Shown here piece by piece: positions 49,689-64,000 of a stretch of 64,000 bases of DNA. The DNA lies in IMG/VR virus record IMGVR_UViG_3300045996_002337, positions 62,001 through 126,000 of that record; one strand, written 5' to 3'. The notes beneath the pieces were generated by a model, which was given only the letters and a program-made list of their open reading frames with translations, did not search any database and had not been told where the DNA came from. The translations under genes and the position numbers were made by a program. Position 1 is the stretch's first letter, and every line of letters begins with the position of its first letter.

Positions 49689-49718
49689 GGTTCTCCTATT
49701 AACCGTCTATTTACGACT

Positions 49719-50209: not shown

Positions 50210-50242
50210 GCGTGGGCTCCGGTAGTGTTTGCGATGAACGGT

Positions 50243-50283
50243 GTTGATAGGTAGATTATATCAACCTGACCCAGGTTGTACAC
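50243..50283 (-). promoter_or_regulatory. Early sigma70-like promoter with hairpin
   Basis: GTGTACA-N16-TATAAT; inverted repeat GTTGATA/TATCAAC around the -10. Confidence 0.75.
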
Positions 50284-50285
50284 TA

Positions 50286-50456
50286 CTAGAAGCACATTGT
50301 GTAGCGAAGCTTTTTACCACGAATACCGATTCGGTCTTGACAGCCATTCTTTTCACTGATGACCCAATAGAGCGAAGGGCGCCCGCTCTTTGGTTCAGCT
50401 TTCATGGTCGAACAACCAGTGAGAAACAAGATCGAAAGGCAAATAAGCAGCTTCAT
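50286..50456 (-). CDS. Small lipoprotein (56 aa)
   Basis: MKLLICLSILFLTGC lipobox; AGGAG SD; GTAAATA at 50480-50486. Confidence 0.65.
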   Translation of the reverse strand: MKLLICLSILFLTGCSTMKAEPKSGRPSLYWVISEKNGCQDRIGIRGKKLRYTMCF

Positions 50457-50501
50457 ACAACATCTCCTTAGCACTCTGATATTTACCAGTCGATCAACCT
50501 G

Positions 50502-50645
50502 TCAATCGTAGCGAAACTGAAACCAGTGATATCGAGCCATGAACGCGGACTTTGACAGGTCGATGACTCGGATTTGATTACCGTGGTCATCGACGATGTG
50601 GGTCAGGATGAAGACGCCTGACCCAGGGATTGCAAATTCAGTCAT
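50502..50645 (-). CDS. 47-aa mini-protein (MTEFAIPGSGVFILTH...)
   Basis: Not in the ORF track; ATG overlaps the upstream stop (ATGACTGA). Confidence 0.4.
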   Translation of the reverse strand: MTEFAIPGSGVFILTHIVDDHGNQIRVIDLSKSAFMARYHWFQFRYD

Positions 50646-50955
50646 TGAGCACCGTCACACGGACATCACGCAGCTTCGGGTTGTGGAATACGTCGGCCCA
50701 TGTCGGGCGGAATTCCCAAAATCGGATGTCACCATCTGCATCACGTTGCTCGGCAACCATCTCGAACTCGACCTCTGCGCCAGTCTTGCTTGACACCATC
50801 ACGAAGCCACGTTCGGCGCTGTTGATGTAGAGCTGACCCATCGGATCCACACCGCCGTGACTAAGCATCGAAATCTCAGCCACGAATTCTTTGCTCTTGG
50901 GGATGAAGTCAAACTTGGAGGAATTGACCTTGCAACCAATGACGGGGTTCTGCAT
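50638..50955 (-). CDS. Early hypothetical protein
   Basis: Downstream of an early promoter. Confidence 0.55.
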   Translation of the reverse strand: MQNPVIGCKVNSSKFDFIPKSKEFVAEISMLSHGGVDPMGQLYINSAERGFVMVSSKTGAEVEFEMVAEQRDADGDIRFWEFRPTWADVFHNPKLRDVRVTVLND

Positions 50956-50970
50956 GTTGGGTTCCTGGTG

Positions 50971-51015
50971 GGTTGGTATGAAGCTATTATACTCAACCTA
51001 TGTTAGCTTGTACAC
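50971..51015 (-). promoter_or_regulatory. Early sigma70-like promoter with hairpin
   Basis: GTGTACA-N17-TATAAT; GGTTGGTAT/ATAC(T)CAACC. Confidence 0.75.
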
Positions 51016-51053
51016 CGCTATCTAGCAACTAATGCTATAATTGTTGCGCGCTG

Positions 51054-51383
51054 TTATGTCAGTGCCTCGTCGAAGTAGGACTCGTCAGTTGCATACCAGC
51101 TGTCTTCGATCACAGCATTTTCCTGCACGACTTTTCCGATCACGACGTGTTTCTTCGACGAGCTTAGCTCAATCTCACGCAGTGAGATTTTCTTTGCGAT
51201 GAAGGCCCGCACAGACTCGATGTCTGTCTCGATGATCATCCACACGTCCTCGTTCTCGACGACGTCTACCCACTTTCTGAGTGCGATTTCCCCATCAAGG
51301 GTTTCATAAAGACTCAGCACGGGACCATCGAACCACAGCAGGTCCTCAAGGAAGACAAGTTTGTCGATGTCGATTTTGGTCAT
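51054..51383 (-). CDS. Hypothetical protein (DUF6575-like)
   Basis: 'FDGP.L', 'WVD', 'ISLRE'; start moved to 51383. Confidence 0.45.
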   Translation of the reverse strand: MTKIDIDKLVFLEDLLWFDGPVLSLYETLDGEIALRKWVDVVENEDVWMIIETDIESVRAFIAKKISLREIELSSSKKHVVIGKVVQENAVIEDSWYATDESYFDEALT

Positions 51384-51481
51384 GTTTAACCTTAGTGTGA
51401 AATGGAGTAGAGGAGCATGCAAGCAACGCCGATCAGGAAGATAGCTTGCGGCCACGTGAATTCGGGTGGTTCGTTTTGCAT

Positions 51482-51985
51482 TTAGGTGCACTCATAGAGC
51501 GTATTTTTCTTGCCACTGTTTGCAAGACGGATGCTCGAGCGCATCCGCAAGCGAAGGACTCGAGCTTCATCGGACTCTTCGCCAGCACGAGGCATCACCC
51601 GAAGCACCGGTACTGGTTCACCTTGCTCGGTGCACCGAGCAGCTTTGCGTTGCAGCTTTGCCGTGGTACTGTAGCGGGTCTTCCACGTCCTCAGTTCGCT
51701 GATCAAAATGTTTGTCACTAGTTCCTGAGCTAGCTTGTCAGGTAGCTGAAGGGCGCCCGCCCGCATCGCCGTGTCCATCATGGCTAGAACACGCCCGAAC
51801 GTTGACGGTAGAATCTCGTCAGTGCGTATGTGGGCCATCACGATGTCCTTCAAGGTTCCGCGCCAGATTTCAAGTTTGCGGGCGACCTTCCGATTGAGGG
51901 CCGCATCGCCCTTCTCGTTCAGGTACAACGTCAGGTACAGCGCCGCTGGGGACTTACCGTATGTGTTCTTACTGAGGTTCAGCAT
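51482..51985 (-). CDS. Hypothetical basic protein
   Basis: Start moved to 51985. Confidence 0.5.
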   Translation of the reverse strand: MLNLSKNTYGKSPAALYLTLYLNEKGDAALNRKVARKLEIWRGTLKDIVMAHIRTDEILPSTFGRVLAMMDTAMRAGALQLPDKLAQELVTNILISELRTWKTRYSTTAKLQRKAARCTEQGEPVPVLRVMPRAGEESDEARVLRLRMRSSIRLANSGKKNTLYECT

Positions 51986-51986
51986 A

Positions 51987-52418
51987 TTAGCTCGCGTATT
52001 TTGCATGGAACTTCTCCAGATCGGCTTCGATGGAACCGTAACCCTTGCGGACTCTGCCATCGTGCAACCAGTTCACCAGCTTCTCGACCTTCGCGAATGC
52101 CTCGTACTTGTAGTTGAAGGTCCAGTCCTTGGTGTCTTCCCAATCACGTGCTTCCGAGGTGACCACATAGGCGCCGTCTTCACGCTGCGTGATGGGATAC
52201 TGCTTCTTCGCGAGCTCCCACCAGTCCGAGCCCGTGTGCTTTTCAAGGAAGTTCTTTTCCTTGGCAGCCATCTCGCTGTCCATGAGGGATTTGGCAGTAC
52301 GCGCAAGATTCGCGATCGTGGTCTCAAGAAGCGGACTCGGGTTGATGGCGAACTGTCGCTTCATTTTTTCAAGAATGAGAAACGTTTGAGCTGCAGTTTG
52401 CTTAATCATCTTACCCAT
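51987..52418 (-). CDS. Early hypothetical protein
   Basis: AAGGA SD, downstream of an early promoter. Confidence 0.6.
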   Translation of the reverse strand: MGKMIKQTAAQTFLILEKMKRQFAINPSPLLETTIANLARTAKSLMDSEMAAKEKNFLEKHTGSDWWELAKKQYPITQREDGAYVVTSEARDWEDTKDWTFNYKYEAFAKVEKLVNWLHDGRVRKGYGSIEADLEKFHAKYAS

Positions 52419-52434
52419 GCTGCTTCCTTAAGGT

Positions 52435-52477
52435 GGTCGATGGGTTGATTATACACCCATCGACCTGCGTTGTACAC
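52435..52477 (-). promoter_or_regulatory. Early sigma70-like promoter with perfect 11-bp hairpin
   Basis: GTGTACA-N17-TATAAT; GGTCGATGGGT/ACCCATCGACC flanks the -10. Confidence 0.8.
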
Positions 52478-52483
52478 TACTTC

Positions 52484-53962
52484 TTAGGTGATGTTAGCAA
52501 GCGCAATACGCTTCCACAGCTTCGAGCCGGAGTTCGCAACTTGGATCACGTTCAGCAGGGAGCGGCTCGAGATTTCTGCCGCGATTTCACGGTTGTCGTA
52601 GAGGAACTTGTAAGCTTCTTCCTTGATTTCCATCGAGACACCGGGCGCGAACTTCTCGCTCGGCAGAATTTGACGCATGCGTTCGAAGCGCTCTTCAATC
52701 GTCATCTCGAGGTCTGCACGCAGCGAGCGCGTGATCAGCGGTTGGGGGAAATCTTCGGACTTCACGTTCGAGATGAAGATGACGCGGCCTTCAAACAGGA
52801 AGCTGCGCGGCAGGTCGTCGTTGGCCGAGCCTTCCACGTTCCACGTCACCCAACGCTCGGTGTCGGTGTCGAGGGCGGCCTTCAGCAGGTTTGCCGAGAC
52901 CTCATTCTTCCATGCGGCGTCGCAGTCATCAAACACGACGAGCTTCTTCTTGTTCTCGAACAGCGTACGGAAGAGGCCCTTGGCGCTCGAGTAACCTTTG
53001 ACATAGTGATAGTCACCTGCCAGGTCGGGGGCTTGCTTGACGTTCTCTACGTCCATGGTGTGATATCGGTCGGCAGGGATGCCGAAAACCGACGTCATGA
53101 TCTTGCACCATTCCTTGCCGTGGCCCTGCTTCACCTTAAGGCTCTTGGGGAAGAGCATAAATTGCACGTGGTGGGCAACCTCGTGCGGCACGATGATGTC
53201 GTAGTACTCGCTGGGGTTCGCCATCGCCAGCTTGATGTTGAACTGATACTTGTTGGTACCGGGGAAGAACCGACCGCCACAGGTGCGATCCTCGAGTGAT
53301 TTGGAGGTGTGCAGGCCGGTGAAGTCCACATCACCAAAGACCAGCTCGAGCTCGTCGAGTTCCTCGTCTTCTTCGTCCTCGTCCTCGTCTCGATCGGCCT
53401 TGCTGGTCTTCGGGAGACCATGTTCCTTGTAGTACGCGATCGCTTGGGCACGGCATTCCTTCATGCGACGAAGGATGTTGTCGGCTACGACTTGTTCTTC
53501 CGGTGTGAGGGTGTAGGCAAGCTTCATGGCTTCCTCGGTGGAGAGGAGACCGTGTTCGCGAATCTTTTCCTTCGTGTGGAAGGTCTTACCGAGCGAACCC
53601 TCACCGGTGATGATCAGCGATCGAATGCCGATGTTGCGGATCACGATATCGACGCACTCGTCGAGCAGCTCGTAACGTTCCTCAACGCTGAGGAGGTTGT
53701 TCGGCTTAACGCGGGGAGCTTGCGGGGTATAGGCGCGCGAGACGCCTTCCGACGTGGGGCTCGGTGCAAAATTGACTGGGCCGAGGTTGGAGAAACCTGT
53801 CACGTTCAGCTTGAGGGCCTTCGAGCACTTGCCCTCGAGAATGCGGGAGATGACATACTGCTTCGACGATTCGCCACCAACTGAACGCACAAGAACTTGG
53901 CCGTCAAATTCGGCAGACCAAGTGTTGGTGTTTTCGTCGTGGCAAAGGGTTGCGAGATTCAT
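52484..53962 (-). CDS. AAA+ ATPase with nested SprT-like zinc metalloprotease domain
   Basis: Walker A GEGSLGKT; HEVAH...GHGKEW; Walker B VVFDDCD; start moved to 53962. Confidence 0.75.
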   Translation of the reverse strand: MNLATLCHDENTNTWSAEFDGQVLVRSVGGESSKQYVISRILEGKCSKALKLNVTGFSNLGPVNFAPSPTSEGVSRAYTPQAPRVKPNNLLSVEERYELLDECVDIVIRNIGIRSLIITGEGSLGKTFHTKEKIREHGLLSTEEAMKLAYTLTPEEQVVADNILRRMKECRAQAIAYYKEHGLPKTSKADRDEDEDEEDEELDELELVFGDVDFTGLHTSKSLEDRTCGGRFFPGTNKYQFNIKLAMANPSEYYDIIVPHEVAHHVQFMLFPKSLKVKQGHGKEWCKIMTSVFGIPADRYHTMDVENVKQAPDLAGDYHYVKGYSSAKGLFRTLFENKKKLVVFDDCDAAWKNEVSANLLKAALDTDTERWVTWNVEGSANDDLPRSFLFEGRVIFISNVKSEDFPQPLITRSLRADLEMTIEERFERMRQILPSEKFAPGVSMEIKEEAYKFLYDNREIAAEISSRSLLNVIQVANSGSKLWKRIALANIT

Positions 53963-53971
53963 TCGGTGATT

Positions 53972-54024
53972 TCCTGCAGTGGAGTTGATAGGATAGATTA
54001 TATCCACTCCATGCAGGATGTACA
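53972..54024 (-). promoter_or_regulatory. Early sigma70-like promoter within a long hairpin
   Basis: TGTACA-N16-TATAAT; stems TCCTGCA/TGCAGGA, TGGAGT/ACTCCA, GGATA/TATCC, loop GATTA. Confidence 0.8.
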
Positions 54025-54047
54025 ACATTGAGTTGTAACCGTTTACT

Positions 54048-54416
54048 CTAACTTGTTGCGTCGATGGCGGGTGGTTGCGGCAGCGACATCCAGTAGGTCG
54101 GCTCAACGACGCAGCCGTTGATTGCCTCCCAATAAACCAAGTCGTGTTTTTCGTTGCGCCAACCAGCAGAAACTACGCACGCCCCAAGTCCAGGCGCATA
54201 AGCCAAGACCCGCCGCCCATCCCTCGGGGCCGACTCAATCGGAAGCCATCGCTCAGCATCCTTCGCCGCGCTGGCCGCCATGTCATGCAGGCGGTCGATG
54301 GCAGAGTACAGACGTCCCAAGGTTGTGACGCGGGATGTGTCACGGCTACGGGCTTGAAGGTTGTCCGCGTACCGCTTGCAATCTTCTGCCAGCGCTTCCG
54401 CCATTTGGTTTTTCAT
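54048..54416 (-). CDS. Hypothetical protein with DUF551-like C-terminus
   Basis: 'WLPIESAPRDG', 'PTYWMSLPQPP'; start moved to 54416. Confidence 0.6.
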   Translation of the reverse strand: MKNQMAEALAEDCKRYADNLQARSRDTSRVTTLGRLYSAIDRLHDMAASAAKDAERWLPIESAPRDGRRVLAYAPGLGACVVSAGWRNEKHDLVYWEAINGCVVEPTYWMSLPQPPAIDATS

Positions 54417-54904
54417 CAAAATGCCTTGGTGAGGGAGAGCTGCAACGCATTCACACCAGGATTCGGGCGCTTGAACCCAGCGTTGCTGAAATGTGAGGCG
54501 CGAACCCCAACAACGATGGAGGGGCCGTATCGCCACCCCACACCGAGATGGTCAGCGAACTGCCACCGAGTGGTGATGTCCTGCTCAGCGAACGTCGTGT
54601 CCGTAAAGTAGGAGACGCCGATGCCTGCCTCAACGAACCACCGCGGATTCAAGTTGGCCCGCAGCATAGGGACTGCTGACAGCTGTACAGATCCGCCATT
54701 TGGGCCGTGCCAAAAAGACACGCCGACTTCGGGATGCATCATGATCGAGTATTTCCCGAATTCGCTAACGAACTTCGGTTCGAAGAGGCGATTAACCGTT
54801 ACGCGATACGTCCGCTTCTCGCCACCCACTTGGGCTGAATACAGCGTGTCTGCTTGAGCGGAGGTGGCGAGAAGCGCCACCAGGAGGATTGCCGCGCTCT
54901 TCAT
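54416..54904 (-). CDS. pagL: Lipid A 3-O-deacylase PagL
   Basis: Signal peptide, beta-barrel pattern, 'FVEAGIG', 'QFADH', 'HFSNAG..RPNPGVN', terminal Phe. Confidence 0.85.
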   Translation of the reverse strand: MKSAAILLVALLATSAQADTLYSAQVGGEKRTYRVTVNRLFEPKFVSEFGKYSIMMHPEVGVSFWHGPNGGSVQLSAVPMLRANLNPRWFVEAGIGVSYFTDTTFAEQDITTRWQFADHLGVGWRYGPSIVVGVRASHFSNAGFKRPNPGVNALQLSLTKAF

Positions 54905-55104
54905 TACTTGGCCAGAGCAGTTTGAACCTTGCCGAGCAGCGTCTCGAACTTCAGCCGACGAAGGTCCGACTTGGCCCCGACCTTCAGCTTGACGCCGTGG
55001 GCGACGAGCTTATCAAAGTCCTTCGCCTTGCCGGCAAGAACGGAAGCTGCCCAAACGGGGCCGAACGAGAAGCGCTTGCGGGGCTTGGAAACGGTATCAG
55101 TCAT
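54904..55104 (-). CDS. Small basic early protein
   Basis: GGAG SD, first gene after an early promoter. Confidence 0.55.
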   Translation of the reverse strand: MTDTVSKPRKRFSFGPVWAASVLAGKAKDFDKLVAHGVKLKVGAKSDLRRLKFETLLGKVQTALAK

Positions 55105-55146
55105 CTTTTCTCCAAAACAGTTTAGTATGAGTTCATCAAACTTCTG

Positions 55147-55186
55147 ATGATGGTTAGATTATAACCACATTTTGAAAGATGTACAC
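55147..55186 (-). promoter_or_regulatory. Early sigma70-like promoter with hairpin
   Basis: GTGTACA-N16-TATAAT; ATG(A)TGGTTA-GATTA-TAACCACAT. Confidence 0.8.
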
Positions 55187-55188
55187 AC

Positions 55189-55416
55189 TTAAACTGTAAC
55201 GTCGCTAGGAAAGAACGCCGACTTCTTCACGTTGAAATCATAGCTAGAGCGATATTCAACGCCCAAATCTCGAGAAAGAATGCCTAGGATTGACCGTTGA
55301 ATTACGAGGTAATCGTCAAATGACTGCCTCAAACTGAAACCACGAGGTGGCAGATCAAAGCACGCGCGGTCTGAAATAGATGACAGCACAAAATCTCTAA
55401 ATTCTTCGTTGGTCAT
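55189..55416 (-). CDS. Hypothetical protein
   Basis: TAATG-coupled ORF. Confidence 0.45.
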   Translation of the reverse strand: MTNEEFRDFVLSSISDRACFDLPPRGFSLRQSFDDYLVIQRSILGILSRDLGVEYRSSYDFNVKKSAFFPSDVTV

Positions 55417-55874
55417 TACCGCACCTTGAGGCGAAGCCAGCTCTCAATTGCTTGACGAACGATTGGCTTGATATCTTCCTTGCTGATAACCACGTCTTCA
55501 GAGATTGAAATTTCCCCATCAAACGTCGGCTCGAATGCACCAGTGGCCACCAAGGCCTCCATCATGTCAATGGTGGCGTGATCAAGCTCGTCATCGTATG
55601 GAACACCTTGGTCAATCGTGTCATGAATCTCCTTGAGAATTTCATCTTGACGATCAACTTTCATAGAGAGCCGCTGAACTTCAGCTTCGAGCTCATCCAC
55701 AGTTTCCATGTACGCAACGAACATGCCGTCAACCTGCGTAATAAGTTCATTGAGTTCCTCACCGGGAGGAACGTGCCCAGTTTCTGAAATTGAGCCTCCA
55801 GAAACTGCATCAAGAATGTCTCGAAGGCGGGCCAACCCGATTTCTTCGTCGCTAACTCTACTTACGATTTCCAT
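55416..55874 (-). CDS. Acidic coiled-coil hypothetical protein
   Basis: AGGAG SD. Confidence 0.55.
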   Translation of the reverse strand: MEIVSRVSDEEIGLARLRDILDAVSGGSISETGHVPPGEELNELITQVDGMFVAYMETVDELEAEVQRLSMKVDRQDEILKEIHDTIDQGVPYDDELDHATIDMMEALVATGAFEPTFDGEISISEDVVISKEDIKPIVRQAIESWLRLKVR

Positions 55875-56319
55875 TATTGTCTCCTTGATAGAACTGTTGG
55901 AAGCACTGCGTCCAATCTTTACGGATGCATTCCTGCGCCTGGGTTATTTCCATCCGCCCTGAACAAACTTCTTTGCGAAGTCGCACCTCTAGGCGGGTCT
56001 TCGAGAAAACATTCCAATCTGCCCCGTATTCATGGGGCCAAAGGTTCCTTGGATCGTTTGAGCCGCCAATGGACAGCGGAATCAAGTGATCAATCTTGCA
56101 ACCTTTATTACACCGCTCTTTATCAACCTTGTGAGCCCTGTAGACTTTATTCTTGATTGATCTGGAGACATTTCGCGCCTTTGCGGGATAGTCTTTGGCG
56201 CACACTAGAACTGTGTCGGTTGACGCAACAAGCCCTGGCGTTAATTCTGGGGATGGGAGATATGGATATGACTGCGCCGTTGTCGCGCAAAAGAGAAGAA
56301 GCCAGATGCCGCTGCGCAT
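55858..56319 (-). CDS. HNH nuclease with signal peptide (probably exported)
   Basis: 'MRSGIWLLLFCATTAQS', 'IDHLIPLSIGGSND..NLWP', several Cys. Confidence 0.7.
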   Translation of the reverse strand: MRSGIWLLLFCATTAQSYPYLPSPELTPGLVASTDTVLVCAKDYPAKARNVSRSIKNKVYRAHKVDKERCNKGCKIDHLIPLSIGGSNDPRNLWPHEYGADWNVFSKTRLEVRLRKEVCSGRMEITQAQECIRKDWTQCFQQFYQGDNNGNRK

Positions 56320-56325
56320 GGGGCC

Positions 56326-56589
56326 TCAATCTGGAACGTAGCCAACGAGGGCTTCAGTTCCACTTGGGCAAAATGCCAAAAGCTCGGTGAGCTCATCAGC
56401 ATCGACATCCGTGGGATCAACTGGACCGAACCGCTCAATGAACGTTAGGTCTTCGGCTTGACCTTTGAAGCCGACGCCTTCATAAGAAATTTGACCGCGA
56501 TTATTGTTGGTGACGACCAGGTATTCTTGAACTTCAGTGTTGAGATAAATTTGACCAACAAGAATCAAAGGTGACTTGATAGGCGACAT
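56326..56589 (-). CDS. Hypothetical protein
   Basis: GGAG SD; TGTACT-N17-TATAAT promoter at 56649-56677. Confidence 0.55.
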   Translation of the reverse strand: MSPIKSPLILVGQIYLNTEVQEYLVVTNNNRGQISYEGVGFKGQAEDLTFIERFGPVDPTDVDADELTELLAFCPSGTEALVGYVPD

Positions 56590-56691
56590 GTTTTGTACTA
56601 CTCCGGGGTTTATGAAAGTAACATCAATATCATTACCGATGTTACTTCATTATAGAACTACAGGTTAAAATAGTACAATTGTAAACGAAGG

Positions 56692-58278
56692 TCAGGACTG
56701 GAACACGAAGAACGCCGACCCGGCCGTCTTATCACCTGTCGTGTACGCATTCGGCGAACCGAATACTGGAGTGCTTGCTGGAGCCAGGTAAGTCGAAGTG
56801 TCCTTGATCACATCATACTTCACAGACAGGGCGCCGTTCATGACGTCCGTGCTCGTGAATGAAACGGCAATGTGAAGGGTCGTATCAGTCGGTGTTGCAA
56901 CTGTGACCGTGTAGGAGGCACCCGCAACGGTCTGGGTGGTGAGCGCCACGCCGCCCGCTGTAGCTGCCTTTACGCCAGAGTTAACAGGGGCGATTGACTG
57001 CGAAAGCGGAAGCGCACTGCTGAAGATGCGAACCTTATCGGCGTTGAGGCGAATAACACCGCGCTGGTCCAGGAGCGACTTCATATTCGTATCGCCCGTG
57101 GTTGTTGGACTTCCCAAGTTCATCGTCAACTGAATTGCACCACCGGAATTGAGGAACGTGTTGCGTGCCTCGAGCGAAGGAAACTGAAACCGCATGGTCA
57201 TTGACGCGGTAGCTGAACCACCAACTGAACCACCAAATTGAACGTGATGCGCAACGGTTGTCGTGGCTGCGAATGCAGTGTTCGAACCAGTCGCCCCATT
57301 GATACCGCGCAGCGAGTAGCGGTTGAGGACTGCGGTGTTCAACACGTTCATTGTTTCTGAATACAGGCGCATGAGGGTCACAAGACCAAAGCGACGACCT
57401 GAACGGCGCTCGAGCGACGGGTAGCGTGAATCAGCAGTGTTAAGACCGAGGAGAGAAACTGGAGCCTGACGCCCGTCAGTGATGAAAGGCACTGGTGAGA
57501 TATCGTCAGCATAGCCGGCTGGAAGATCGAGCCGCTCAATTGCGTATTTGGCCGCGGCGAGGAGGGTGTCCCAATCATTAGAGTTCGGGTCGACCATCAT
57601 TTCGGCTGTTGACTCACCTGTCGGGGTCAGAACATTACCGTCTAATGGTGTACGAAGCGCGAACTTGGCACGAAGGTTAGTGTCAAGCGCTTCCAGGTTT
57701 GAAACGTCAGTGATCGCTTTGCCGAGGGCACCATTGCCACCGACGGATGTCGGGCCAATAAGTTGGTTCAGAAGCGACAGAGCGGCTTCATATTCCTCAC
57801 GGCCCGCTACGAAATCGACGGTTGGCCAAACTTGGTTCCAGCCACCGATTGTGGTGCCAGAAACAGGGTAGCGCCCGAGACCAGTGTAGACGTACAGAAT
57901 GCCAGACGATGAACCAGTGCGCTGGAACCAAATATCGCCAAGAGCAGCTGATGTAGGGGCCTCTTCACCGTTGTTTGTAACCTGAATACCGGCGAGTGAC
58001 TTCCAAGTTAGGGGCGCGGTCGACGCGCACAGACGAAGAATTGCGTTAGTTGAATCATACCAAAGCTGACCAACGGTTGGATACGCTGGAGCTGTGCCGT
58101 CTGCGAAGTTCTCAAGCAGACGCATCAAGTTTTCTTGCTGAACGGTGCCGTAGTTTGCTGCACCCTTACCTGTGAAACGAATCGACGCCTTGTCAGATAC
58201 GATCGTGCCAACGGGCACTTGAATGGGGGTTCCCTTGTTTACATCAAGGGCAGGGCTTTTCCAATTGAGAATATACAT
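56692..58278 (-). CDS. Virion structural / tail-fibre-like protein
   Basis: 'G.G..NYG....ENL..LLENFA...P..P..GQLWYD' motif of large-phage fibre/baseplate proteins; GTAAATA at 58344-58350; start moved to 58278. Confidence 0.65.
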   Translation of the reverse strand: MYILNWKSPALDVNKGTPIQVPVGTIVSDKASIRFTGKGAANYGTVQQENLMRLLENFADGTAPAYPTVGQLWYDSTNAILRLCASTAPLTWKSLAGIQVTNNGEEAPTSAALGDIWFQRTGSSSGILYVYTGLGRYPVSGTTIGGWNQVWPTVDFVAGREEYEAALSLLNQLIGPTSVGGNGALGKAITDVSNLEALDTNLRAKFALRTPLDGNVLTPTGESTAEMMVDPNSNDWDTLLAAAKYAIERLDLPAGYADDISPVPFITDGRQAPVSLLGLNTADSRYPSLERRSGRRFGLVTLMRLYSETMNVLNTAVLNRYSLRGINGATGSNTAFAATTTVAHHVQFGGSVGGSATASMTMRFQFPSLEARNTFLNSGGAIQLTMNLGSPTTTGDTNMKSLLDQRGVIRLNADKVRIFSSALPLSQSIAPVNSGVKAATAGGVALTTQTVAGASYTVTVATPTDTTLHIAVSFTSTDVMNGALSVKYDVIKDTSTYLAPASTPVFGSPNAYTTGDKTAGSAFFVFQS

Positions 58279-58361
58279 TTTCTTCTTTCTCCTGTCGGGT
58301 AAGATGGGTGCGAGGCCGCCCGACTGTCCTTGACCGCGCATCTTATTTACGCAGAAACAGG

Positions 58362-58383
58362 AAGAGGACCCGAAGGTCCTCTT
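58362..58383 (-). terminator. Intrinsic terminator with C(UUCG)G tetraloop
   Basis: AAGAGGACC-TTCG-GGTCCTCTT on the minus strand after phoH. Confidence 0.75.
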
Positions 58384-58407
58384 ATTATGCGTTAAAAGAA
58401 GTTGAGA

Positions 58408-59211
58408 TTATCCGTGCAGAAGCGCTGGGCCGCTGAAATCATGACGGCTGATACCGTTGACTGCCCCATTTGCGCGGCGCTTTTCCGGTTGAACTTTTGG
58501 TTCAGGGGAATCGAGATGCTGAAGGATGGTTTTAACAATCTCTGAACGAACTACGTCGCTGTTGGAGAACTCGATGACGTTGATATCTGATGAACACCCG
58601 CGCAGCTTGCGTGCCACCCATTGAAGACCGTTTTCTGGAACACCTCGAAGGTCGGTCTGCGAAACGTCTCCGTTAACCGCGAACTGTGAGTACTCGCCGA
58701 TACGGGTAACAAACAACTTCATTTGCTCGATGGTCGTGTTCTGCGCTTCATCCAAGATGACGTAGCAGTTTGTGAACGTACGCCCACGCATGTAAGCAAG
58801 CGGAGCAAACTCGATCTTGCCGCCTTCCAATAGCTTCTTTGCCATCGTAGGACCAACTAGATCATTGAGCGCGTCGAGAAGTGGTAGGAGATAAGGGGAG
58901 ATTTTCTCTTCAAATGTGCCAGGCAGGAAGCCGAGCGATTCACCAGCCTCTACGATTGGTCGCGTGATAACGACCTTAGAGACCTCATTTGAGAGAAGTT
59001 TTTCAACGGCAACGGCCATTGAAAGGAACGATTTGCCCGAACCAGCAGGGCCTGTTCCAATAGTCAGTTTCGCATTCGTGAGTGATTCAACGTAGAAACG
59101 TTGCGACTCATTCTTAGGGTTTGGGCGGAACTTAAGGCGAATAGCAGTGCTCCCTTCTGGGTTAACTGGTTGCGGATATTTCTGTTTAGCCAAGGCGAGT
59201 TTTCTTCCCAT
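58408..59211 (-). CDS. phoH: PhoH-like ATPase
   Basis: 'GPAGSGKS', 'LGFLPG', 'YMRGRTF', 'LDEAQN', 'GD..Q.D'. Confidence 0.95.
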   Translation of the reverse strand: MGRKLALAKQKYPQPVNPEGSTAIRLKFRPNPKNESQRFYVESLTNAKLTIGTGPAGSGKSFLSMAVAVEKLLSNEVSKVVITRPIVEAGESLGFLPGTFEEKISPYLLPLLDALNDLVGPTMAKKLLEGGKIEFAPLAYMRGRTFTNCYVILDEAQNTTIEQMKLFVTRIGEYSQFAVNGDVSQTDLRGVPENGLQWVARKLRGCSSDINVIEFSNSDVVRSEIVKTILQHLDSPEPKVQPEKRRANGAVNGISRHDFSGPALLHG

Positions 59212-59262
59212 TGTAATCCTCCAGGAAATGGGATCAGGCGAGAACTCGTGCTACATTAGCGA

Positions 59263-59628
59263 TTATTCCTGCTTTTGCAACACGAAGCGAAGCCAATCAG
59301 AGGAGCTGATCTGTGTGCTGTGAAGCGCTGCTTCCCCAGCCTTGATGCAATCAAGGAGGTACTGGGCGAGTTTCACCTTTTCGGAGGGGGTTAAGCTCTT
59401 GATTGTCTCAATGACACGGACCGAGGTCGCATCAGAAGAGATGTTGACGATTCCATCAAGTTGGCTGTTAACGCTAACGCCGCCATTCTTGAAGAATTCA
59501 GAAAGATTTGCGAGGGCAAAGATGTGGTAGTGGTTGGTGGCATCCCCTGCTTGAATGATCTCAGCCATGGTGAGCTCGTAAGGGATTGGGCCTGTCATTT
59601 CTTGAACTACTACGCGGTGAAGTTTCAT
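59263..59628 (-). CDS. Hypothetical late protein
   Basis: TATAAATA at 59657-59664; N-terminus MKLHRVVVQE. Confidence 0.5.
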   Translation of the reverse strand: MKLHRVVVQEMTGPIPYELTMAEIIQAGDATNHYHIFALANLSEFFKNGGVSVNSQLDGIVNISSDATSVRVIETIKSLTPSEKVKLAQYLLDCIKAGEAALHSTQISSSDWLRFVLQKQE

Positions 59629-59714
59629 GCTACTGTCTCAGCAGGTTGTTATCGTTTATTTATAGTGCGCCGTTACATGGTTAAATAATAGCACACAACC
59701 AAACGGAGACCCAA

Positions 59715-59942
59715 ATGGATACAGGTTTGACACCAAATGAGGGCGAAAGCTTTGTAGATGAAGCTCGCCAACCAATTCCGCCAGCGAATACGTGGGATGA
59801 GCTGACTGTTAATCAGCTCATTGAGTTGAAGGGGCAGCTTGAAGAAAAGCGTTGGGCTTTCGCCAAGAACGCCGTGATTGCCAAGGCCCTCGATGAAGGC
59901 CTGGCAAAAATCACTCTGCTGATTTCTTCGCGCTCTTCCTAA
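59715..59942 (+). CDS. Small hypothetical late protein
   Basis: TTAAATA at 59681-59687, GGAG SD; divergent from 59628. Confidence 0.5.
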   Translation: MDTGLTPNEGESFVDEARQPIPPANTWDELTVNQLIELKGQLEEKRWAFAKNAVIAKALDEGLAKITLLISSRSS

Positions 59943-60555
59943 CGCGTGGCACCTTTGGAATCTGCGGAATGTCAAGGTAGTCAGTAACGCGGTCACAGAG
60001 ACCAAACTTCTTGCATTCTGCGGGACTCAGCCATCGATCAGAAGGAGCAAACAGCACGTCGTTGATTTGCTTCTCATTCATGTTTGAATGGCGAAGAAAG
60101 TGGTCAACGAACAGCGACTTCAGACGAATGTGCTCGTTTGTTACAGCCATCAGTTCGTGAAATTTTCCCTCCATGCCACCCATCCACTGGTGTGCCATGA
60201 TCTCGGTGTTCTTCGTGATGGTGCGGGTGCCTTTATGGCCTGCCGCCAAAATAAGGAGCGCCATTGACGCGATCAAACCAGTTCCCACGGTTTGAACGGG
60301 AAGACGCGACGTCTCCATGACATCGATGATTGCAAAGCCGTCATTCACATGACCGCCTTCAGAGTTGATGATGAACGTCAGGGGATTTTCTGTCGCCTGA
60401 AGCATGTTCGCCTTGATGATGAACTCACACGCTTCGTAGGCGGTTCCTTGATCTACCCCGCCAAATAGCATGTACGCACCAAGCGATTGCAGACTGATCA
60501 TCTCATATGGCACCGACACCTGTTCTGATGCCGATGTTTGGTCAGTTCTACGCAT
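59911..60555 (-). CDS. clpP: ClpP-like serine protease
   Basis: 'INSEGG', 'GLIASMA', 'IMAHQ', 'DRWLS..E...FGL.D'. Confidence 0.85.
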   Translation of the reverse strand: MRRTDQTSASEQVSVPYEMISLQSLGAYMLFGGVDQGTAYEACEFIIKANMLQATENPLTFIINSEGGHVNDGFAIIDVMETSRLPVQTVGTGLIASMALLILAAGHKGTRTITKNTEIMAHQWMGGMEGKFHELMAVTNEHIRLKSLFVDHFLRHSNMNEKQINDVLFAPSDRWLSPAECKKFGLCDRVTDYLDIPQIPKVPRVRKSAKKSAE

Positions 60556-60604
60556 TATGATCTCTCCTATGAACGTGCCAGATGCACGTTCTATTTAGAG
60601 GAGT

Positions 60605-61231
60605 TTAACCACAATAGAACTCGCCCGGGCTGCCCCCAGCAATCGCGACAGAAATGAAGCCCAAAGCAGGAACCCGGCCCCTTTTTTCATAGAAAAGAGC
60701 ATCTTTCGCGTACCCGGCGTCAGCCTGCGCAATCGCCTGGCGAGTCGTGAAGACCTGCTCACCCCGGGCAAAAGCGATTCGAACAATTGCGGCATCAAAG
60801 ATCGCCAAAGAAAAATGCCTCGACCATGCTCTTCCGAAGAAGATGTAAGTCACCAACTGGTAGAAGATGATGCTGGTGATTGGAACCTGCGGTGAAAAAT
60901 CTGTCACGCCAAAGTTCCAAAAGGTAGAAACAATTGGCCCCCAGATAACAAAAAGGGTGACGTCTCGCATGTTCTCAAACATCCACGATACCGCCGCCTT
61001 ATCACCGGTGAAAGCCGAGTACATCAGCGTCAGGGCCATGCCAAAGAACAGCGCAAGAATGTTTGAGAACAGAAGTGAAGTGGGGAACGCAACGAACTTG
61101 ACGATGCGATACCGCACGCCAGCCTTGGCTAGAAAGAACGCCAGCGCCGTGAAGAGGGCGCTTGCAATCATCAATGGCAGCATGAAGAGGAAGGCGAAAA
61201 CTCCACCTCCACCTTCCGACTTCGTGCTCAT
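60605..61231 (-). CDS. Multi-TM membrane protein
   Basis: Three to four hydrophobic helices; start moved to 61231 (ATGA overlap). Confidence 0.55.
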   Translation of the reverse strand: MSTKSEGGGGVFAFLFMLPLMIASALFTALAFFLAKAGVRYRIVKFVAFPTSLLFSNILALFFGMALTLMYSAFTGDKAAVSWMFENMRDVTLFVIWGPIVSTFWNFGVTDFSPQVPITSIIFYQLVTYIFFGRAWSRHFSLAIFDAAIVRIAFARGEQVFTTRQAIAQADAGYAKDALFYEKRGRVPALGFISVAIAGGSPGEFYCG

Positions 61232-62391
61232 GCAGCTTCTCCAGTTACGGTAGGAATCACTTCCAACGACCAGTTTTCGTCGAGCTTGTTCTTCACGTAC
61301 CACTCACGGTAATCAACCTCTTGACCGCGGAAGGCACGCATGATCAGACCGAAAAGCGCGTGCTCACGAAGAGCCAGGGCCATGTCCTTCGCAGTCCGCT
61401 CGAGCACACGACCGTTGCCAGCATGCAGCTCGACAGCAGTCTGAATGATGTTCAACTCACGGTTGATGCGGTTCTCGATATCCACAATCGGCTGGATCGA
61501 GCGGCCCGTCATCGCGAAGGCAGCCTTCAAGTCGTCGGACTTGTCTTCCAGCACAACGCGAGCCACATCGCGGTAGCGGGTGAAGGTAACCGAGTGGTGC
61601 AGATCGCAGTACCACTTCGTCTTGATCTTCCACATCTGGCCATCGTCAGCTTGAATGATCCAACCTTCAACACCGGTTCGGGTTTCTGCAGCTCGCTTCA
61701 GCATTTCCCAGGACACCAGGTTTTCAATACCGGCGTCCGTCACCTTCGCTTCGGAGAAGAGACCGAGAACATTCTCGACGGTCGGAAACGGGCAGTCATC
61801 ACCGAAGTGACGGTCTAGTTCGACGACGTAGTTACCCGTCGTGTTGTCACGGATCTGAAGCAGAGTCAGCTCGTCCTTGTCGTACGTCAACACGATAGGA
61901 AACCGAGGAGACGTCCATTCAAAGGTCGGCGTGTAGCCGTTTTGAAGCATCTTCAAAACCCACAAGAACTTTTCAGGATCAGCCTTCAAGAACTCGTTGG
62001 CTGCCAGAGCTTCCGCGGACGTGAAGGTCTTCTTCGTCTTGCACGCGATCGAGCCGTCCGCCAGCAGAACCGGCGTGATCATCGAACCATCACGCTTGTC
62101 CATCACACGAACGATCCGATTCCAAGGAATCAGGTCGGGCTGCGTGGATTCGTTTTCGCCAACGTTTTGGAACTTGTGAAGGGTTCGCGCTACCACTCGC
62201 CCCGTCGAGGTGTCGAAGGTGATACCACGGCATTCTTTGTACCAATCTTCGTGCTCACCGCGGAAGGTGTCTTCGTCTTGGAGCATGTAGCAGATGACGG
62301 TCGTGCCGTTGGGCTGCTCAGCCACTCGGAACTGCGAGTTGCCTTCGATGTATGGGAGTAGATCATTGATGTGATTGATAGTTGGAAACAT
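61228..62391 (-). CDS. rnlA: RNA ligase 1 (T4 RnlA-like)
   Basis: 'ECRGI.F', 'KF.N..E', 'KRDGSMI', 'T.TFE', 'EGW', 'KIKT.WY..LH'. Confidence 0.9.
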   Translation of the reverse strand: MFPTINHINDLLPYIEGNSQFRVAEQPNGTTVICYMLQDEDTFRGEHEDWYKECRGITFDTSTGRVVARTLHKFQNVGENESTQPDLIPWNRIVRVMDKRDGSMITPVLLADGSIACKTKKTFTSAEALAANEFLKADPEKFLWVLKMLQNGYTPTFEWTSPRFPIVLTYDKDELTLLQIRDNTTGNYVVELDRHFGDDCPFPTVENVLGLFSEAKVTDAGIENLVSWEMLKRAAETRTGVEGWIIQADDGQMWKIKTKWYCDLHHSVTFTRYRDVARVVLEDKSDDLKAAFAMTGRSIQPIVDIENRINRELNIIQTAVELHAGNGRVLERTAKDMALALREHALFGLIMRAFRGQEVDYREWYVKNKLDENWSLEVIPTVTGEAA

Positions 62392-62400
62392 TTTGATTCC

Positions 62401-62733
62401 TTAGGCCACTTCGACTTGTGCTTCGACAAACGCGACATAGTCGGCGTACGGAATCGGCATGATGTCGTCTTGTTGGGTGATCACACACCAACCATTCTTG
62501 TTGTAGTTTTGCTTCCTCGAGCACGGATAGAACATGTCGTCTTTCAGAACACCGATCGCTTGCCAGACCGACGGCGCGTCGAAGTCGAAACCGTAGAAGG
62601 CCTTGAACTCACCGAAGATCACGAAACCCATTTCGTCGTATCGAACGACGTCTTTTGCCCGCCGCTGACCTTTCTTGCGGGTCGGAAAGCAAGCGGGGAA
62701 GACATCACGACCGGCGGGTTTCTTGTCAGACAT
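62401..62733 (-). CDS. Early hypothetical protein
   Basis: First gene after the promoter at 62763-62791. Confidence 0.55.
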   Translation of the reverse strand: MSDKKPAGRDVFPACFPTRKKGQRRAKDVVRYDEMGFVIFGEFKAFYGFDFDAPSVWQAIGVLKDDMFYPCSRKQNYNKNGWCVITQQDDIMPIPYADYVAFVEAQVEVA

Positions 62734-62750
62734 TTCGAGTTCCGTTTTGA

Positions 62751-62791
62751 TTCGATAGATGTATTCTAACTCGAACCTGTATTTCTGTACA
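62751..62791 (-). promoter_or_regulatory. Early sigma70-like promoter with hairpin
   Basis: TGTACA-N17-TAGAAT; TTCGATAGA/TCTA(AC)TCGAA. Confidence 0.7.
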
Positions 62792-62808
62792 TCAAATAAG
62801 TGTAACGA

Positions 62809-63063
62809 TCAGGCTTGAGGTGTAGGCACGAGCCGGTGTGGGAATACGGAGCCTGTCGAGTTTACATCTTGCTCTTCGACCATCACACCATGACGATACA
62901 CTTCAACGCGAGTGAAGTTCAACGTAACCTTGTCGCCAAGCTTTCCGTGAAGGATGTTCTTGGCCACCCCGAAGGCGATTTGGTTGTACTCTTCCTTGTC
63001 ACCACCGACGTGAATGAGATACTCGCGACCGAGCACGACATCTTGCATGAATGCGTCTCTCAT
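62809..63063 (-). CDS. Hypothetical protein
   Basis: TAATG-coupled ORF. Confidence 0.5.
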   Translation of the reverse strand: MRDAFMQDVVLGREYLIHVGGDKEEYNQIAFGVAKNILHGKLGDKVTLNFTRVEVYRHGVMVEEQDVNSTGSVFPHRLVPTPQA

Positions 63064-63473
63064 TACTTCACCAGCTCGTGAAGCGTGCCATCGGCCTTGC
63101 GACGACGAACTTCAGATTTCGAGATGCCATACTTCGCGGAGATTTCAGCCACCGTGCCAAGCTCGTGCGGCTGCTGATTCGCCTTCAGCTCTTCGAGAAC
63201 GACGGCTTTAGCAGCTTTTCGTTCTTGGTGATCTTCCTTGAAAGCGTAGTCCATCAAGATTTGGAGCTGATGCTTGAAGTTAGCCTTGATATTTTCGAGG
63301 CGCACAATGGCATCCGCTTCGTCTTTGGCATTCAGCTTGGCAGTTTCGAACAGGACTTCATCGTGCGAACCCATCGCAATACACGTGATGATCGTGAGTT
63401 GATCAGGACCAGGGGTAATTGCGCCAGAGATGATGCTCAGCCCACGCAGTGACAGTTCAGTGTTGATTTTCAT
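63063..63473 (-). CDS. Hypothetical protein with C-terminal HTH-like motif
   Basis: 'TVAEISAKYGISKSEVRRRK'. Confidence 0.55.
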   Translation of the reverse strand: MKINTELSLRGLSIISGAITPGPDQLTIITCIAMGSHDEVLFETAKLNAKDEADAIVRLENIKANFKHQLQILMDYAFKEDHQERKAAKAVVLEELKANQQPHELGTVAEISAKYGISKSEVRRRKADGTLHELVK

Positions 63474-63475
63474 GA

Positions 63476-63817
63476 TCAGGCCTTTTTAACGTAGTGGGCA
63501 GTCATTGCGATCCGGACTTCAGGATTTGCCAATTGAGCGCAAACCGCTTTGAGGCCTTCAGCTGTTTCGTAGAAATAATCGACGATGAACACCCCCTCAA
63601 TCCCGAAGAGGCGGACAGTATCACCAACCCGATAGGAGCCAGTGTTACACGTGTATTCCAGCAGTTCAAGCTGATCCGGCAGAAAGAAATCCACCGTCGA
63701 ATCGGCGATCTGCTCTGCCTTAATCATGTTGAGAGCAAATCCCTTGATACAATATTCGGGAGAGCCACGTTTTCCAGCTTCGCGAACGATTTGGCCGACT
63801 TCGAAGGTGATGTTCAT
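63476..63817 (-). CDS. Hypothetical protein (two short SH3/KOW-like repeats)
   Basis: 'FEVGQIV', 'YRVGDTV'; probably leaderless. Confidence 0.5.
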   Translation of the reverse strand: MNITFEVGQIVREAGKRGSPEYCIKGFALNMIKAEQIADSTVDFFLPDQLELLEYTCNTGSYRVGDTVRLFGIEGVFIVDYFYETAEGLKAVCAQLANPEVRIAMTAHYVKKA

Positions 63818-63853
63818 GAATGAATTATATCCATAACATCACAGGTTGTACAC
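63807..63853 (-). promoter_or_regulatory. Early sigma70-like promoter with hairpin
   Basis: GTGTACA-N17-TATAAT; GTGATGTT/AACATCAC. Confidence 0.75.
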
Positions 63854-64000
63854 AACTATTTTCCTGCTTTTATGCAGGCCAAAAGAAATGTTGCGCGATC
63901 GTCGGCGTTAGCGTCCTTGGTGATCTTAGTTGGGGGCGTCACCTCTTTCTCGCCAATTTGGCAGGTGATTACCCCGTCGAGCTTGCACACAACTGGGTCT

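What the first reader, a model, noticed from the sequence alone, without database searches (positions are those of the whole stretch)
50243..63853. Early promoters whose -10 box sits at the tip of a hairpin with a different stem sequence each time
Seen: seven minus-strand TGTACA-N16/17-TA(T/G)AAT promoters (-10 at 50255, 50986, 52448, 53997, 55158, 62763, 63824). In each, the spacer is complementary to sequence downstream of the -10: a perfect 11 bp at 52435-52465, 18 bp in three segments at 53972-54018, 8 bp plus an inner stem at 63807-63842. Two share the loop GATTA. Structure is conserved while stem sequence is not. Known: N4 virion RNA polymerase uses hairpin promoters, and T4 genes such as e and soc have hairpins that hide the RBS only in read-through transcripts. 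Inference: either cruciform-assisted promoter opening/recognition, or insulators that silence or process read-through RNA (the arms cover the SD at 53971-53976 and the ATG at 63815-63817).
Basis: partly seen in the sequence, partly recalled or inferred. Interest (0 to 1): 0.75.

Follow-up and report, generated by a model that had tools for sequence, protein, structure and literature searches.

The report
Promoters embedded inside read-through RNA hairpins
In an uncultivated 350-kb jumbo phage, about a third of the host-type promoters have a spacer that base-pairs with the start of their own transcript, so the hairpin can form only in RNA read through from upstream; it most likely silences or insulates the next gene, as known T4 hairpins do, rather than helping the polymerase find the promoter.

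Summary
All seven minus-strand TGTACA-N16/17-TA(T/G)AAT promoters are real (0.01 expected by chance). They belong to a set of 49-51 in the 349,660-bp phage genome, all on the minus strand. The hairpin claim holds for the class but not for each site. Two of the seven (-10 at 52448 and 53997) fold far better than shuffles (z about -5), three are modest and two are at chance. Genome-wide, each spacer pairs with its own downstream sequence much better than with other promoters' (z = -9). Two related contigs repeat this (z = -6.6 and -5.3) with unrelated stems, and the effect appears only when the -10 is central. The arms fill the spacer and the first ~15 nt of the transcript. Loops run 5-40 nt, no U tract follows, and ordinary terminators occur elsewhere. 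G·U pairs and a sense-strand stability bias mildly favour RNA. Strong hairpins usually cover the Shine-Dalgarno site or AUG. About a quarter of the promoters drive leaderless genes. Best reading: T4 e/soc-type masking of read-through transcripts, PeSL-like in anatomy. The N4-like cruciform reading is not supported. No transcript data exist, so the mechanism is inferred.

The parts
50255..50282 (-). Promoter P1 (TGTACA-N16-TATAAT). It has a weak 7-bp pairing GTTGATA/TATCAAC at 50243-50265 and a small hairpin inside the spacer. The downstream ORF is 49883-50209.
   Evidence: The fold is no better than shuffles (z +0.57).
50986..51014 (-). Promoter P2 (N17). It has a weak GGTTG/CAACC pairing at 50971-50998, the arm pair shared by about ten promoters of the genome. 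The downstream ORF is 50638-50955.
   Evidence: z -0.55.
52435..52476 (-). Promoter P3 (52448-52476) with a perfect 11-bp hairpin at 52435-52465. The 9-nt loop holds most of the -10. The downstream ORF is 51987-52418; the SD lies just 3' of the stem.
   Evidence: (z -4.9, 0/200 shuffles).
53972..54024 (-). Promoter P4 (53997-54024) with an 18-bp, three-segment hairpin at 53972-54018 and loop TAATC. The 3' arm reaches into the SD (CAGGAA). The downstream gene, 52484-53962, encodes a SprT-like/ATPase protein.
   Evidence: (z -5.3, 0/200 shuffles).
55150..55185 (-). Promoter P5 (55158-55185) with a 7-bp hairpin at 55150-55168 and loop TAATC. A second small hairpin follows in the gene's own transcript. 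The downstream ORF is 54904-55104.
   Evidence: z -1.7, 13/200 shuffles.
56616..56677 (-). No hairpin encloses its -10. Instead a 10-bp hairpin (56616-56647) sits at the 5' end of the gene's own transcript.
62749..62791 (-). Promoter P6 (62763-62791, -10 TAGAAT) with a moderate hairpin at 62749-62777. An alternative 7-bp pairing, TTCGAGT/ACTCGAA, reaches next to the ATG. The downstream ORF is 62401-62733.
   Evidence: z -1.15.
63807..63852 (-). Promoter P7 (63824-63852) with a hairpin at 63807-63842 (8 bp perfect plus an inner stem with two G·U pairs) that pairs the ATG at 63815-63817.
   Evidence: z -1.4.
63476..63817 (-). Leaderless ORF (113 aa). Its ATG begins 6 nt after the -10 of P7, so no SD is possible.

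Best explanation
The hairpins are RNA structures, not DNA structures. Each affected intergenic cassette runs: stop codon of the upstream gene, TGTACA, a 16/17-nt spacer (the 5' arm), TATAAT (the loop), the transcription start, a short 5' UTR or the first codons (the 3' arm), then SD/AUG.

The start site lies between the arms. A transcript made from the gene's own promoter therefore lacks the 5' arm and has an open ribosome-binding region, or for about a quarter of the promoters a 5'-terminal AUG. RNA that reads through from an upstream promoter carries both arms and folds, burying the first ~15 nt of the UTR and usually the SD or AUG. Each gene would then be translated essentially only from its own promoter's transcripts.

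Shown here:
- The promoters exist.
- The arm complementarity is specific to each promoter, specific in position, and repeated in relatives.
- The arms occupy the spacer and the 5' UTR.
- No U tract follows the stem.
- There is a mild sense-strand bias.

Inferred:
- The start site position.
- That read-through transcripts exist.
- The effect on translation.
For: - Arm complementarity is specific to each promoter: z -9.2 in this genome, z -6.6 and -5.3 in two relatives with unrelated stem sequences, and 30/121 strong helices against 2.3% of swapped pairs.
- It is position-specific. The own-minus-swapped energy is -3.2 kcal/mol with the -10 central and within +/-0.8 at every other shift.
- The 5' arm fills the spacer. 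The 3' arm peaks at +9 to +22 after the -10, which is the 5' end of the gene's own transcript.
- 62-76% of strong hairpins pair at least 4 nt of the SD-AUG region, against 33-36% for chance duplexes (p about 1e-4).
- In several leaderless genes the 3' arm contains the AUG.
- Internal mismatches are G·U 11 against A·C 4. Sense-strand duplexes are more stable than antisense in 24 of 36 cases (Wilcoxon p 0.023), while the swapped controls lean the other way.
- No U tract follows the stems: mean 2.1 T in 8 nt, with 1 of 33 having 5 or more.
- GC-rich, short-loop, T-run terminators occur elsewhere in the same genome.
- Precedent: in T4 genes e, soc, 49 and I-TevI a promoter lies inside the hairpin, so that only long transcripts are masked (PMC3014915).
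Against: - No transcript data exist. No RNA run is listed and the host is unknown.
- Only about a third of the promoters have a clear hairpin.
- The 3' arm position does not track the AUG position (rho 0.10). The excess pairing of the SD-AUG region could simply reflect that the arms sit in the short UTR.
- tRNA-array promoters, which have no SD or AUG to hide, also show short flanking pairings.
- One strong hairpin (genome 205973) sits at a promoter divergent from a + strand lipoprotein gene, where read-through is less obvious.
- Hairpins are not conserved at the few orthologous promoters in relatives.
- The enrichment next to an adjoining upstream same-strand ORF is only a trend (37% against 23%, p about 0.15).
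- The G·U against A·C count alone is borderline (p 0.06).
Confidence: 0.45

Rival explanations
1. PeSL-type element acting on the upstream transcript. In read-through RNA the hairpin attenuates transcription, marks a processing site, or protects the 3' end of the upstream gene's mRNA. It straddles the -10 only because the spacer and the UTR are the only unconstrained bases in very tight intergenic gaps.
For: - PeSLs of RB49/phi1 combine a sigma-70 early promoter with a stem-loop that is most often between -35 and -10 or overlapping the -10. One such stem-loop cut lacZ expression as strongly as a strong terminator (PMC2839356).
- Upstream stop codons lie 0-30 nt from the -35 at most strong sites.
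- The arms spread evenly over the spacer and the UTR rather than focusing on the SD.
- tRNA promoters also show the pairing.
Against: - No U tract follows the stems.
- Canonical terminators exist separately in this genome, some directly upstream of other promoters of the same class.
- The stems are unique sequences with 5-40-nt loops, unlike the Gn-loop-Cn or A3-4G3-loop-C3T3-4 stems of PeSLs.
Confidence: 0.25
2. No selected function. The complementarity is a by-product, for example of duplicated promoter cassettes that share the CAGGTTG...CCAACC pair, or of template-switch (quasi-palindrome) mutation in AT-rich promoter DNA.
For: - CAGGTT is present in 19 of 49 spacers (0.35 expected) and about ten promoters share the GGTTG/CAACC arms.
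- Hairpins turn over between orthologous promoters.
- Many promoters lack one.
Against: - The strongest stems are all different, and several have their 3' arm inside coding sequence.
- The signal survives swapping tests that penalise shared arms.
- It is centred exactly on the -10.
- It recurs in three genomes with different stems.
Confidence: 0.15
3. DNA-level role. Supercoil-driven extrusion of a hairpin or cruciform presents the -10 as single-stranded DNA to aid or gate initiation, either N4-like or as a supercoiling sensor.
For: - The -10 is central.
- A few stems are long and perfect with short loops (52435-52465; genome 210827-210856).
- One strong hairpin is at a divergent promoter where read-through is less likely.
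Against: - The fixed 16/17-nt -35/-10 geometry of duplex promoters.
- Loops of up to about 40 nt, bulges and G·U pairs.
- The sense-strand bias.
- Two thirds of the promoters have no hairpin.
- No N4/T7-type polymerase was detected. The relative RsoM2USA is reported to encode no RNA polymerase (PMC8504454).
Confidence: 0.08

Closest known systems
T4 translation-masking hairpins of genes e, soc, 49 and I-TevI (promoter inside the hairpin)
   Same: The promoter lies within the region that encodes the 5' part of the structure, so the start site falls between the arms. The 3' arm pairs the SD and/or the AUG. Only longer transcripts from upstream can fold (PMC3014915).
   Different: - In T4 these are a handful of genes, the internal promoter is a late one (TATAAATA), and the masked RNA is early read-through.
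- Here the internal promoters are sigma-70-like and dozens share the design.
- Both the read-through and the internal promoters may belong to one class.
- Some targets are leaderless genes or tRNA arrays.
- Nothing has been tested experimentally.
PeSLs (promoter-early stem-loops) of T4-like phages RB49, phi1, PST and nt-1
   Same: Compact intergenic cassettes in front of small ORFan genes combine a sigma-70-type early promoter with a stem-loop. In RB49/phi1 the stem-loop is most often between -35 and -10 or overlaps the -10, and G-T pairs are noted in the stems (PMC2839356).
   Different: - PeSL stems have stereotyped sequences (Gn-loop-Cn; A3-4G3-loop-C3T3-4).
- Their position relative to the promoter varies.
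- They are described as terminators and as recombination sites.
- Here the stems are unique, always straddle the -10 and the start site, and lack a U tract, and separate canonical terminators exist.
N4 virion RNA polymerase hairpin promoters
   Same: An inverted repeat lies at a phage promoter.
   Different: From established knowledge, N4 promoters have 5-7-bp stems and 3-nt loops, no -35/-10 hexamers, and are read by a packaged T7-like polymerase. None of this applies here.

Membership tests
T4 e/soc-type promoter-in-hairpin translational masks | A promoter lies inside the structure, so the start site falls between the two arms | tested here: met
   The 5' arm is the -35/-10 spacer and the 3' arm begins 1-12 nt after the -10. 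The start site is predicted from the -10 and has not been mapped.
T4 e/soc-type promoter-in-hairpin translational masks | The 3' arm sequesters the SD and/or the start codon | tested here: inconclusive
   62-76% of strong hairpins pair at least 4 nt of the SD-AUG region, against 33-36% of chance duplexes. There is no correlation with the AUG position, and some stems end upstream of the SD (for example 52435-52465).
T4 e/soc-type promoter-in-hairpin translational masks | Longer read-through transcripts exist and are poorly translated | not testable with these tools
   No RNA run is listed and only low-depth wastewater DNA contigs were found.
PeSL (promoter-early stem-loop) | A sigma-70-like early promoter in a short intergenic gap before small, poorly conserved ORFs | tested here: met
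   There are 49-51 promoters, all on the gene strand. Most downstream ORFs have no Pfam family, and only 12 of the promoter-proximal ORFs have a match in the relative G001.
PeSL (promoter-early stem-loop) | The stem-loop works as a transcription terminator or attenuator, with stereotyped G/C or A3G3...C3T3 stems | tested here: not met
   At sequence level the stems are unique and no T run follows (1 of 33 has 5 or more T in 8 nt). Terminator activity itself cannot be tested here.
PeSL (promoter-early stem-loop) | Repeated, conserved cassettes of about 100 bp that serve as recombination sites | tested here: inconclusive
   A subfamily of near-identical cassettes exists (genome 285520, 300710, 334546, 301912, 19822). 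No recombination junctions were examined.
N4-type hairpin promoters | A 5-7-bp stem with a 3-nt loop and no -35/-10 hexamers | tested here: not met
   Loops are 5-40 nt, and TGTACA and TATAAT are present with a fixed 16/17-nt spacing.
N4-type hairpin promoters | A virion-packaged single-subunit (T7-like) RNA polymerase gene | tested here: inconclusive
   There was no PF00940 match in the genome, but the control genomes did not respond either. The six largest ORFs have no polymerase domain. The 2,873-aa ORF remains unassigned.
Intrinsic (rho-independent) terminators | A GC-rich stem, a short loop and a U tract | tested here: not met
   no T run; terminator-like sites are no more frequent than in shuffles. 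True terminator-like hairpins occur elsewhere.
Palindromic operator for a dimeric repressor | A shared arm consensus at fixed spacing | tested here: not met
   Arm sequences and loop lengths differ from promoter to promoter. Swapped arms do not pair.

The most novel reading that the evidence does not exclude
The inverted repeats act on DNA. In this phage clade, supercoil-driven extrusion or a transient single-stranded state places the -10 of a host-type promoter in a hairpin loop, and this gates initiation. That would be a sigma-70-class counterpart of the N4 hairpin promoter. The evidence does not exclude it for the minority of sites with long perfect stems and short loops, or for the divergent promoter at genome 205973.
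Probability: 0.07. Interest if true: 0.85.

Novelty: new variant of a known kind. Interest (0 to 1): 0.5.

Why it matters
If the masking model is right, this phage clade uses as a general rule what T4 uses for a few genes. Each small gene carries its own promoter, and the promoter's spacer doubles as an anti-UTR. The gene is then expressed only when its own promoter fires and stays silent in any RNA that runs through it. That would explain how hundreds of co-oriented genes can be regulated individually with few terminators. It would also give a sequence signature for predicting transcription units and start sites, including leaderless genes, in uncultivated phage genomes. And it offers compact, protein-free insulator parts for synthetic operons. 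Even if the function differs, the position-specific covariation between spacer and 5' UTR is a clean handle for experiments.

Tried and rejected
- Transcript evidence. A first search for sequencing runs listed none. A second listed only wastewater DNA metagenomes. Laying them gave a few 151-nt unitigs at depth 2 with no coverage of the promoters, plus low-complexity cross-matches at 53351-53397. So there were no 5' ends and no natural variants.\n- Close relatives for compensatory changes. megablast against phages found nothing. The metagenome scan gave one 3-kb contig at 66% identity. The closest contigs (DNA polymerase 58-75% identical) are too distant for intergenic alignment.\n- Conservation at orthologous promoters. 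Only 12 promoter-proximal genes have a match in G001 and the hairpins are not retained there.\n- Folding of whole 86-nt windows by minimum free energy. This measure is weak: the -10 lies in a hairpin loop at 39% of promoters against 27% for swapped halves, and random genome windows fold as well. I replaced it with arm-swapping and shift scans.\n- Upstream terminators against hairpin strength. My detector found only 2 terminators, so the test was dropped. Adjacency to an upstream same-strand ORF gave only a trend.\n- Correlation between 3' arm position and AUG position: none.\n- Rfam found no family in 49500-64000.\n- The operator-palindrome and intrinsic-terminator readings were rejected on sequence grounds.\n- A fifth relative (G006) and RsoM2USA show no signal or only a weak one, so the feature is not universal in the wider group.
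Full report
**What the sequence is.** The window is bases 62001-126000 of a single 349,660-bp virus contig with 51% G+C, which IMG/VR rates 97% complete. About 80% of its ORFs are on the minus strand. It carries 51 tRNA genes and a tmRNA.

Its family-B DNA polymerase is 47% identical to that of Ralstonia jumbo phage RsoM2USA and 34% identical to that of Xanthomonas phage XacN1. Closer uncultivated relatives exist in IMG/VR, with DNA polymerase 58-75% identical. Low-depth traces occur in wastewater metagenomes.

**The promoters.** Genome-wide there are 35 exact sites and 51 with at most one mismatch. Every one is on the minus strand, and nearly all have a 16- or 17-nt spacer (two have 18).

They precede small ORFs, mostly without a known family. 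They also precede the two tRNA arrays. Relatives use the same unusual -35: TGTACA in G002, G006 and RsoM2USA, and TGTGCA or TGTACA in G001. An eighth site in the window, at 56649-56677, has TGTACT. These are therefore real promoters of sigma-70 geometry. That they are 'early' is plausible but untested.

Against dinucleotide shuffles, 52448 and 53997 are outstanding (z -4.9 and -5.3; 0/200 shuffles fold as well). Three sites are modest: 55158 (z -1.7), 63824 (z -1.4) and 62763 (z -1.15). Two are at chance level: 50986 (z -0.55) and 50255 (z +0.57). 'In each' is therefore too strong.

**The hairpins as a class.** I paired each spacer with the 36 nt after its own -10 and, as a control, with the same stretch from every other promoter.
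- Own partners average -10.7 kcal/mol and swapped partners -7.6 (z -9.2; 0 of 20,000 permutations reach it). For 11 of 51 promoters the own partner ranks first.
- The result repeats in G001 (z -6.6, 27 promoters) and in G002 (z -5.3, 23 promoters), with unrelated stem sequences. It is weak in RsoM2USA (z -2.0) and absent in G006 (z -0.1).
- With a helix finder that treats G·U and A·C alike, 30 of 121 promoters have a strong helix, against 2.3% of swapped pairs (p = 3e-22).
- Sliding the same test from -150 to +150 nt shows the excess only at shift 0. There the own-minus-swapped energy is -3.2 kcal/mol, and it stays within +/-0.8 elsewhere. Strong pairs make up 33% at shift 0 and 0-7% in the neighbouring positions.

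So the structure is real and centred on the -10. It is present at roughly a quarter to a half of the promoters: about 30% have unique stems, and about ten promoters share GGTTG/CAACC arms.

A cruder measure, whole-window minimum-free-energy folding, barely separates promoters from controls. I do not rely on it.

**Anatomy.**
- The 5' arm occupies the whole spacer. The 3' arm peaks at +9 to +22 after the -10, which is the first ~15 nt of the transcript expected from that promoter.
- Loops range from 5 to about 40 nt, and bulges are common.
- No U tract follows the stem: mean 2.1 T in the next 8 nt, with 1 of 33 having 5 or more.
- The genome does contain ordinary terminator-like hairpins, with GC-rich stems, 2-7-nt loops and flanking A/T runs. 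Several lie directly upstream of other promoters of this class, and one is in the window at 58362-58383.
- The hairpins that enclose a -10 are therefore a separate class.
- In this genome the spacer also carries a conserved motif, CAGGTT, in 19 of 49 spacers (0.35 expected). This explains the shared arms.

**RNA or DNA?** Several points argue against a duplex-DNA cruciform that helps recognition:
- The strict 16/17-nt spacing of -35 and -10.
- The absence of a hairpin at most promoters.
- The variable loop size and the bulges.
- Strand asymmetry. Internal mismatches flanked by Watson-Crick pairs are G·U 11 against A·C 4, compared with 15 against 20 in swapped controls (Fisher p 0.047).
- Among pairs that are strong on either strand, the sense strand is the more stable in 24 and the antisense in 12 (Wilcoxon p 0.023). 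Chance duplexes lean the other way.

The asymmetry is modest and is not proof.

No T7/N4-type polymerase domain was found, although that search is weak. The relative RsoM2USA is reported to encode no RNA polymerase (PMC8504454).

**Relation to translation starts.**
- Twelve of 49 promoters have an ATG 5-6 nt after the -10 that opens an ORF of 61-654 codons with no room for an SD. These would be leaderless mRNAs; the window example is 63476-63817.
- The arrangement recurs at orthologous genes in G001 and G002.
- The other genes have 5' UTRs of about 20-30 nt with GGAG or AAGGA.
- Among strong hairpins, 62-76% pair at least 4 nt of the SD-to-AUG region, against 33-36% for equally strong chance duplexes (p about 1e-4).
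- In relatives, several 3' arms are the SD itself.
- Part of this excess may only reflect that the arms sit in a short UTR. The 3' arm position does not follow the AUG position (rho 0.10).

**Mechanism proposed.** The start site lies between the arms, so only RNA that arrives from upstream can fold. In that RNA the 5' UTR, or the AUG, of the next gene is paired with the promoter spacer. In the gene's own transcript that region is free. This is the logic shown experimentally for T4 genes e, soc, 49 and I-TevI (PMC3014915), here applied to a whole promoter class. I give it 0.45.

**Rivals.**
- A PeSL-like role on the upstream RNA: attenuation, processing or 3'-end protection (0.25).
- No selected function (0.15).
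- A DNA-level role (0.08).

**Evidence that does not fit.**
- tRNA promoters show short flanking pairings although they have nothing to mask.
- The 12-bp hairpin at genome 205973 is at a promoter divergent from a + strand lipoprotein gene.
- Hairpins are not kept at orthologous promoters.
- Association with an adjoining upstream same-strand ORF is only a trend (37% against 23% strong; p 0.12-0.19).
- No RNA data are available.

**Comparison with known systems.** PeSLs of RB49/phi1 are the closest in anatomy. They combine a sigma-70 early promoter with a stem-loop that often lies between -35 and -10 or over the -10, and G-T pairs are noted in their stems (PMC2839356). However, their stems are stereotyped, their position varies, and they are described as terminators and recombination sites.

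The T4 masking hairpins are the closest in logic, but they are few and are built around late promoters. N4 hairpin promoters share only the presence of an inverted repeat. Literature searches found no description of TGTACA promoters or of this arrangement in the RsoM2USA/XacN1 group.

**Verdict.** This is a real, statistically robust and position-specific feature, overstated at the level of single sites. It is best read as a genome-wide variant of a known phage device and not as a new way of recognising promoters. Interest is moderate (0.5), and the mechanism awaits 5'-end mapping and stem-swap reporters.

Noticed in passing
window 63476-63817 (-); also genome 318615, 302229, 299194, 229220, 220719, 210837, 205973, 185261, 180040, 168220, 147079: Twelve of 49 promoters have an ATG 5-6 nt after the -10 that opens an ORF of 61-654 codons with no possible SD. 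These are probably leaderless mRNAs. The arrangement is kept at orthologous genes in two related contigs.
   Followed up: partly
genome 195139-199494 and 241167-250364 (outside the window); promoters at genome 200075, 200171, 250796, 251012, 251202: There are 51 tRNA genes in two minus-strand arrays. Each array is driven by tandem TGTACA/TATAAT promoters that share a conserved leader (agcttcatcggtt...) with its own small hairpin.
   Followed up: partly
genome 258611-258769 and 259276-259675: Two adjacent tRNAs have anticodon CUA (amber-suppressor-like; ARAGORN labels them 'Pyl'). A phage-borne tmRNA has the tag ANEANYRMAA.
   Followed up: no
window 54416-54904 (-): This ORF has a PagL lipid A 3-O-deacylase domain (E 2e-27) and a hydrophobic N-terminus. 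That implies a Gram-negative host and possible remodelling of the outer membrane.
   Followed up: no
all promoters; e.g. window 50261-50267, 50994-50999: The -35 hexamer is TGTACA, a palindrome, and not TTGACA. The spacer motif CAGGTT is in 19 of 49 spacers (0.35 expected), and its complement AACCTG directly follows the -35 in four others. Together they would form CAGGTTGTACAACCTG, so this may be a third promoter element or a factor-binding site. The relative G001 prefers TGTGCA and lacks CAGGTT.
   Followed up: partly
Its hairpin (10 bp, 56616-56647) lies wholly in the gene's own transcript, directly after the -10, and does not enclose the -10.
   Followed up: partly
genome 252149-252185 and nine other sites (e.g. 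window 59650-59657): TATAAATA, the T4 late-promoter motif, occurs 10 times on the minus strand (8 of them intergenic) and once on the plus strand. At genome 252164 it sits in the loop of a 12-bp hairpin. At 256033 and 237472 a hairpin begins right after it. A weak sigma-70 region 2 match lies at genome 46356-46544.
   Followed up: no
window 58362-58383 (-); genome 36763, 171064, 231854, 348289 and others: These are canonical terminator-like hairpins, many bidirectional (A-run, GC stem, short loop, T-run). They are clearly distinct from the hairpins embedded in promoters.
   Followed up: partly
window 52484-53962 (-), especially 53351-53397: This 492-aa protein has a SprT-like metalloprotease domain and a C-terminal region matching phrog_1250. 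An acidic DEDEDEED-type stretch in it attracts spurious metagenome matches.
   Followed up: no
genome 57327-65948 (+), i.e. window 1-3948 and upstream: This 2,873-aa ORF has no Pfam family. It is of the size class of packaged giant proteins and was not examined further.
   Followed up: no
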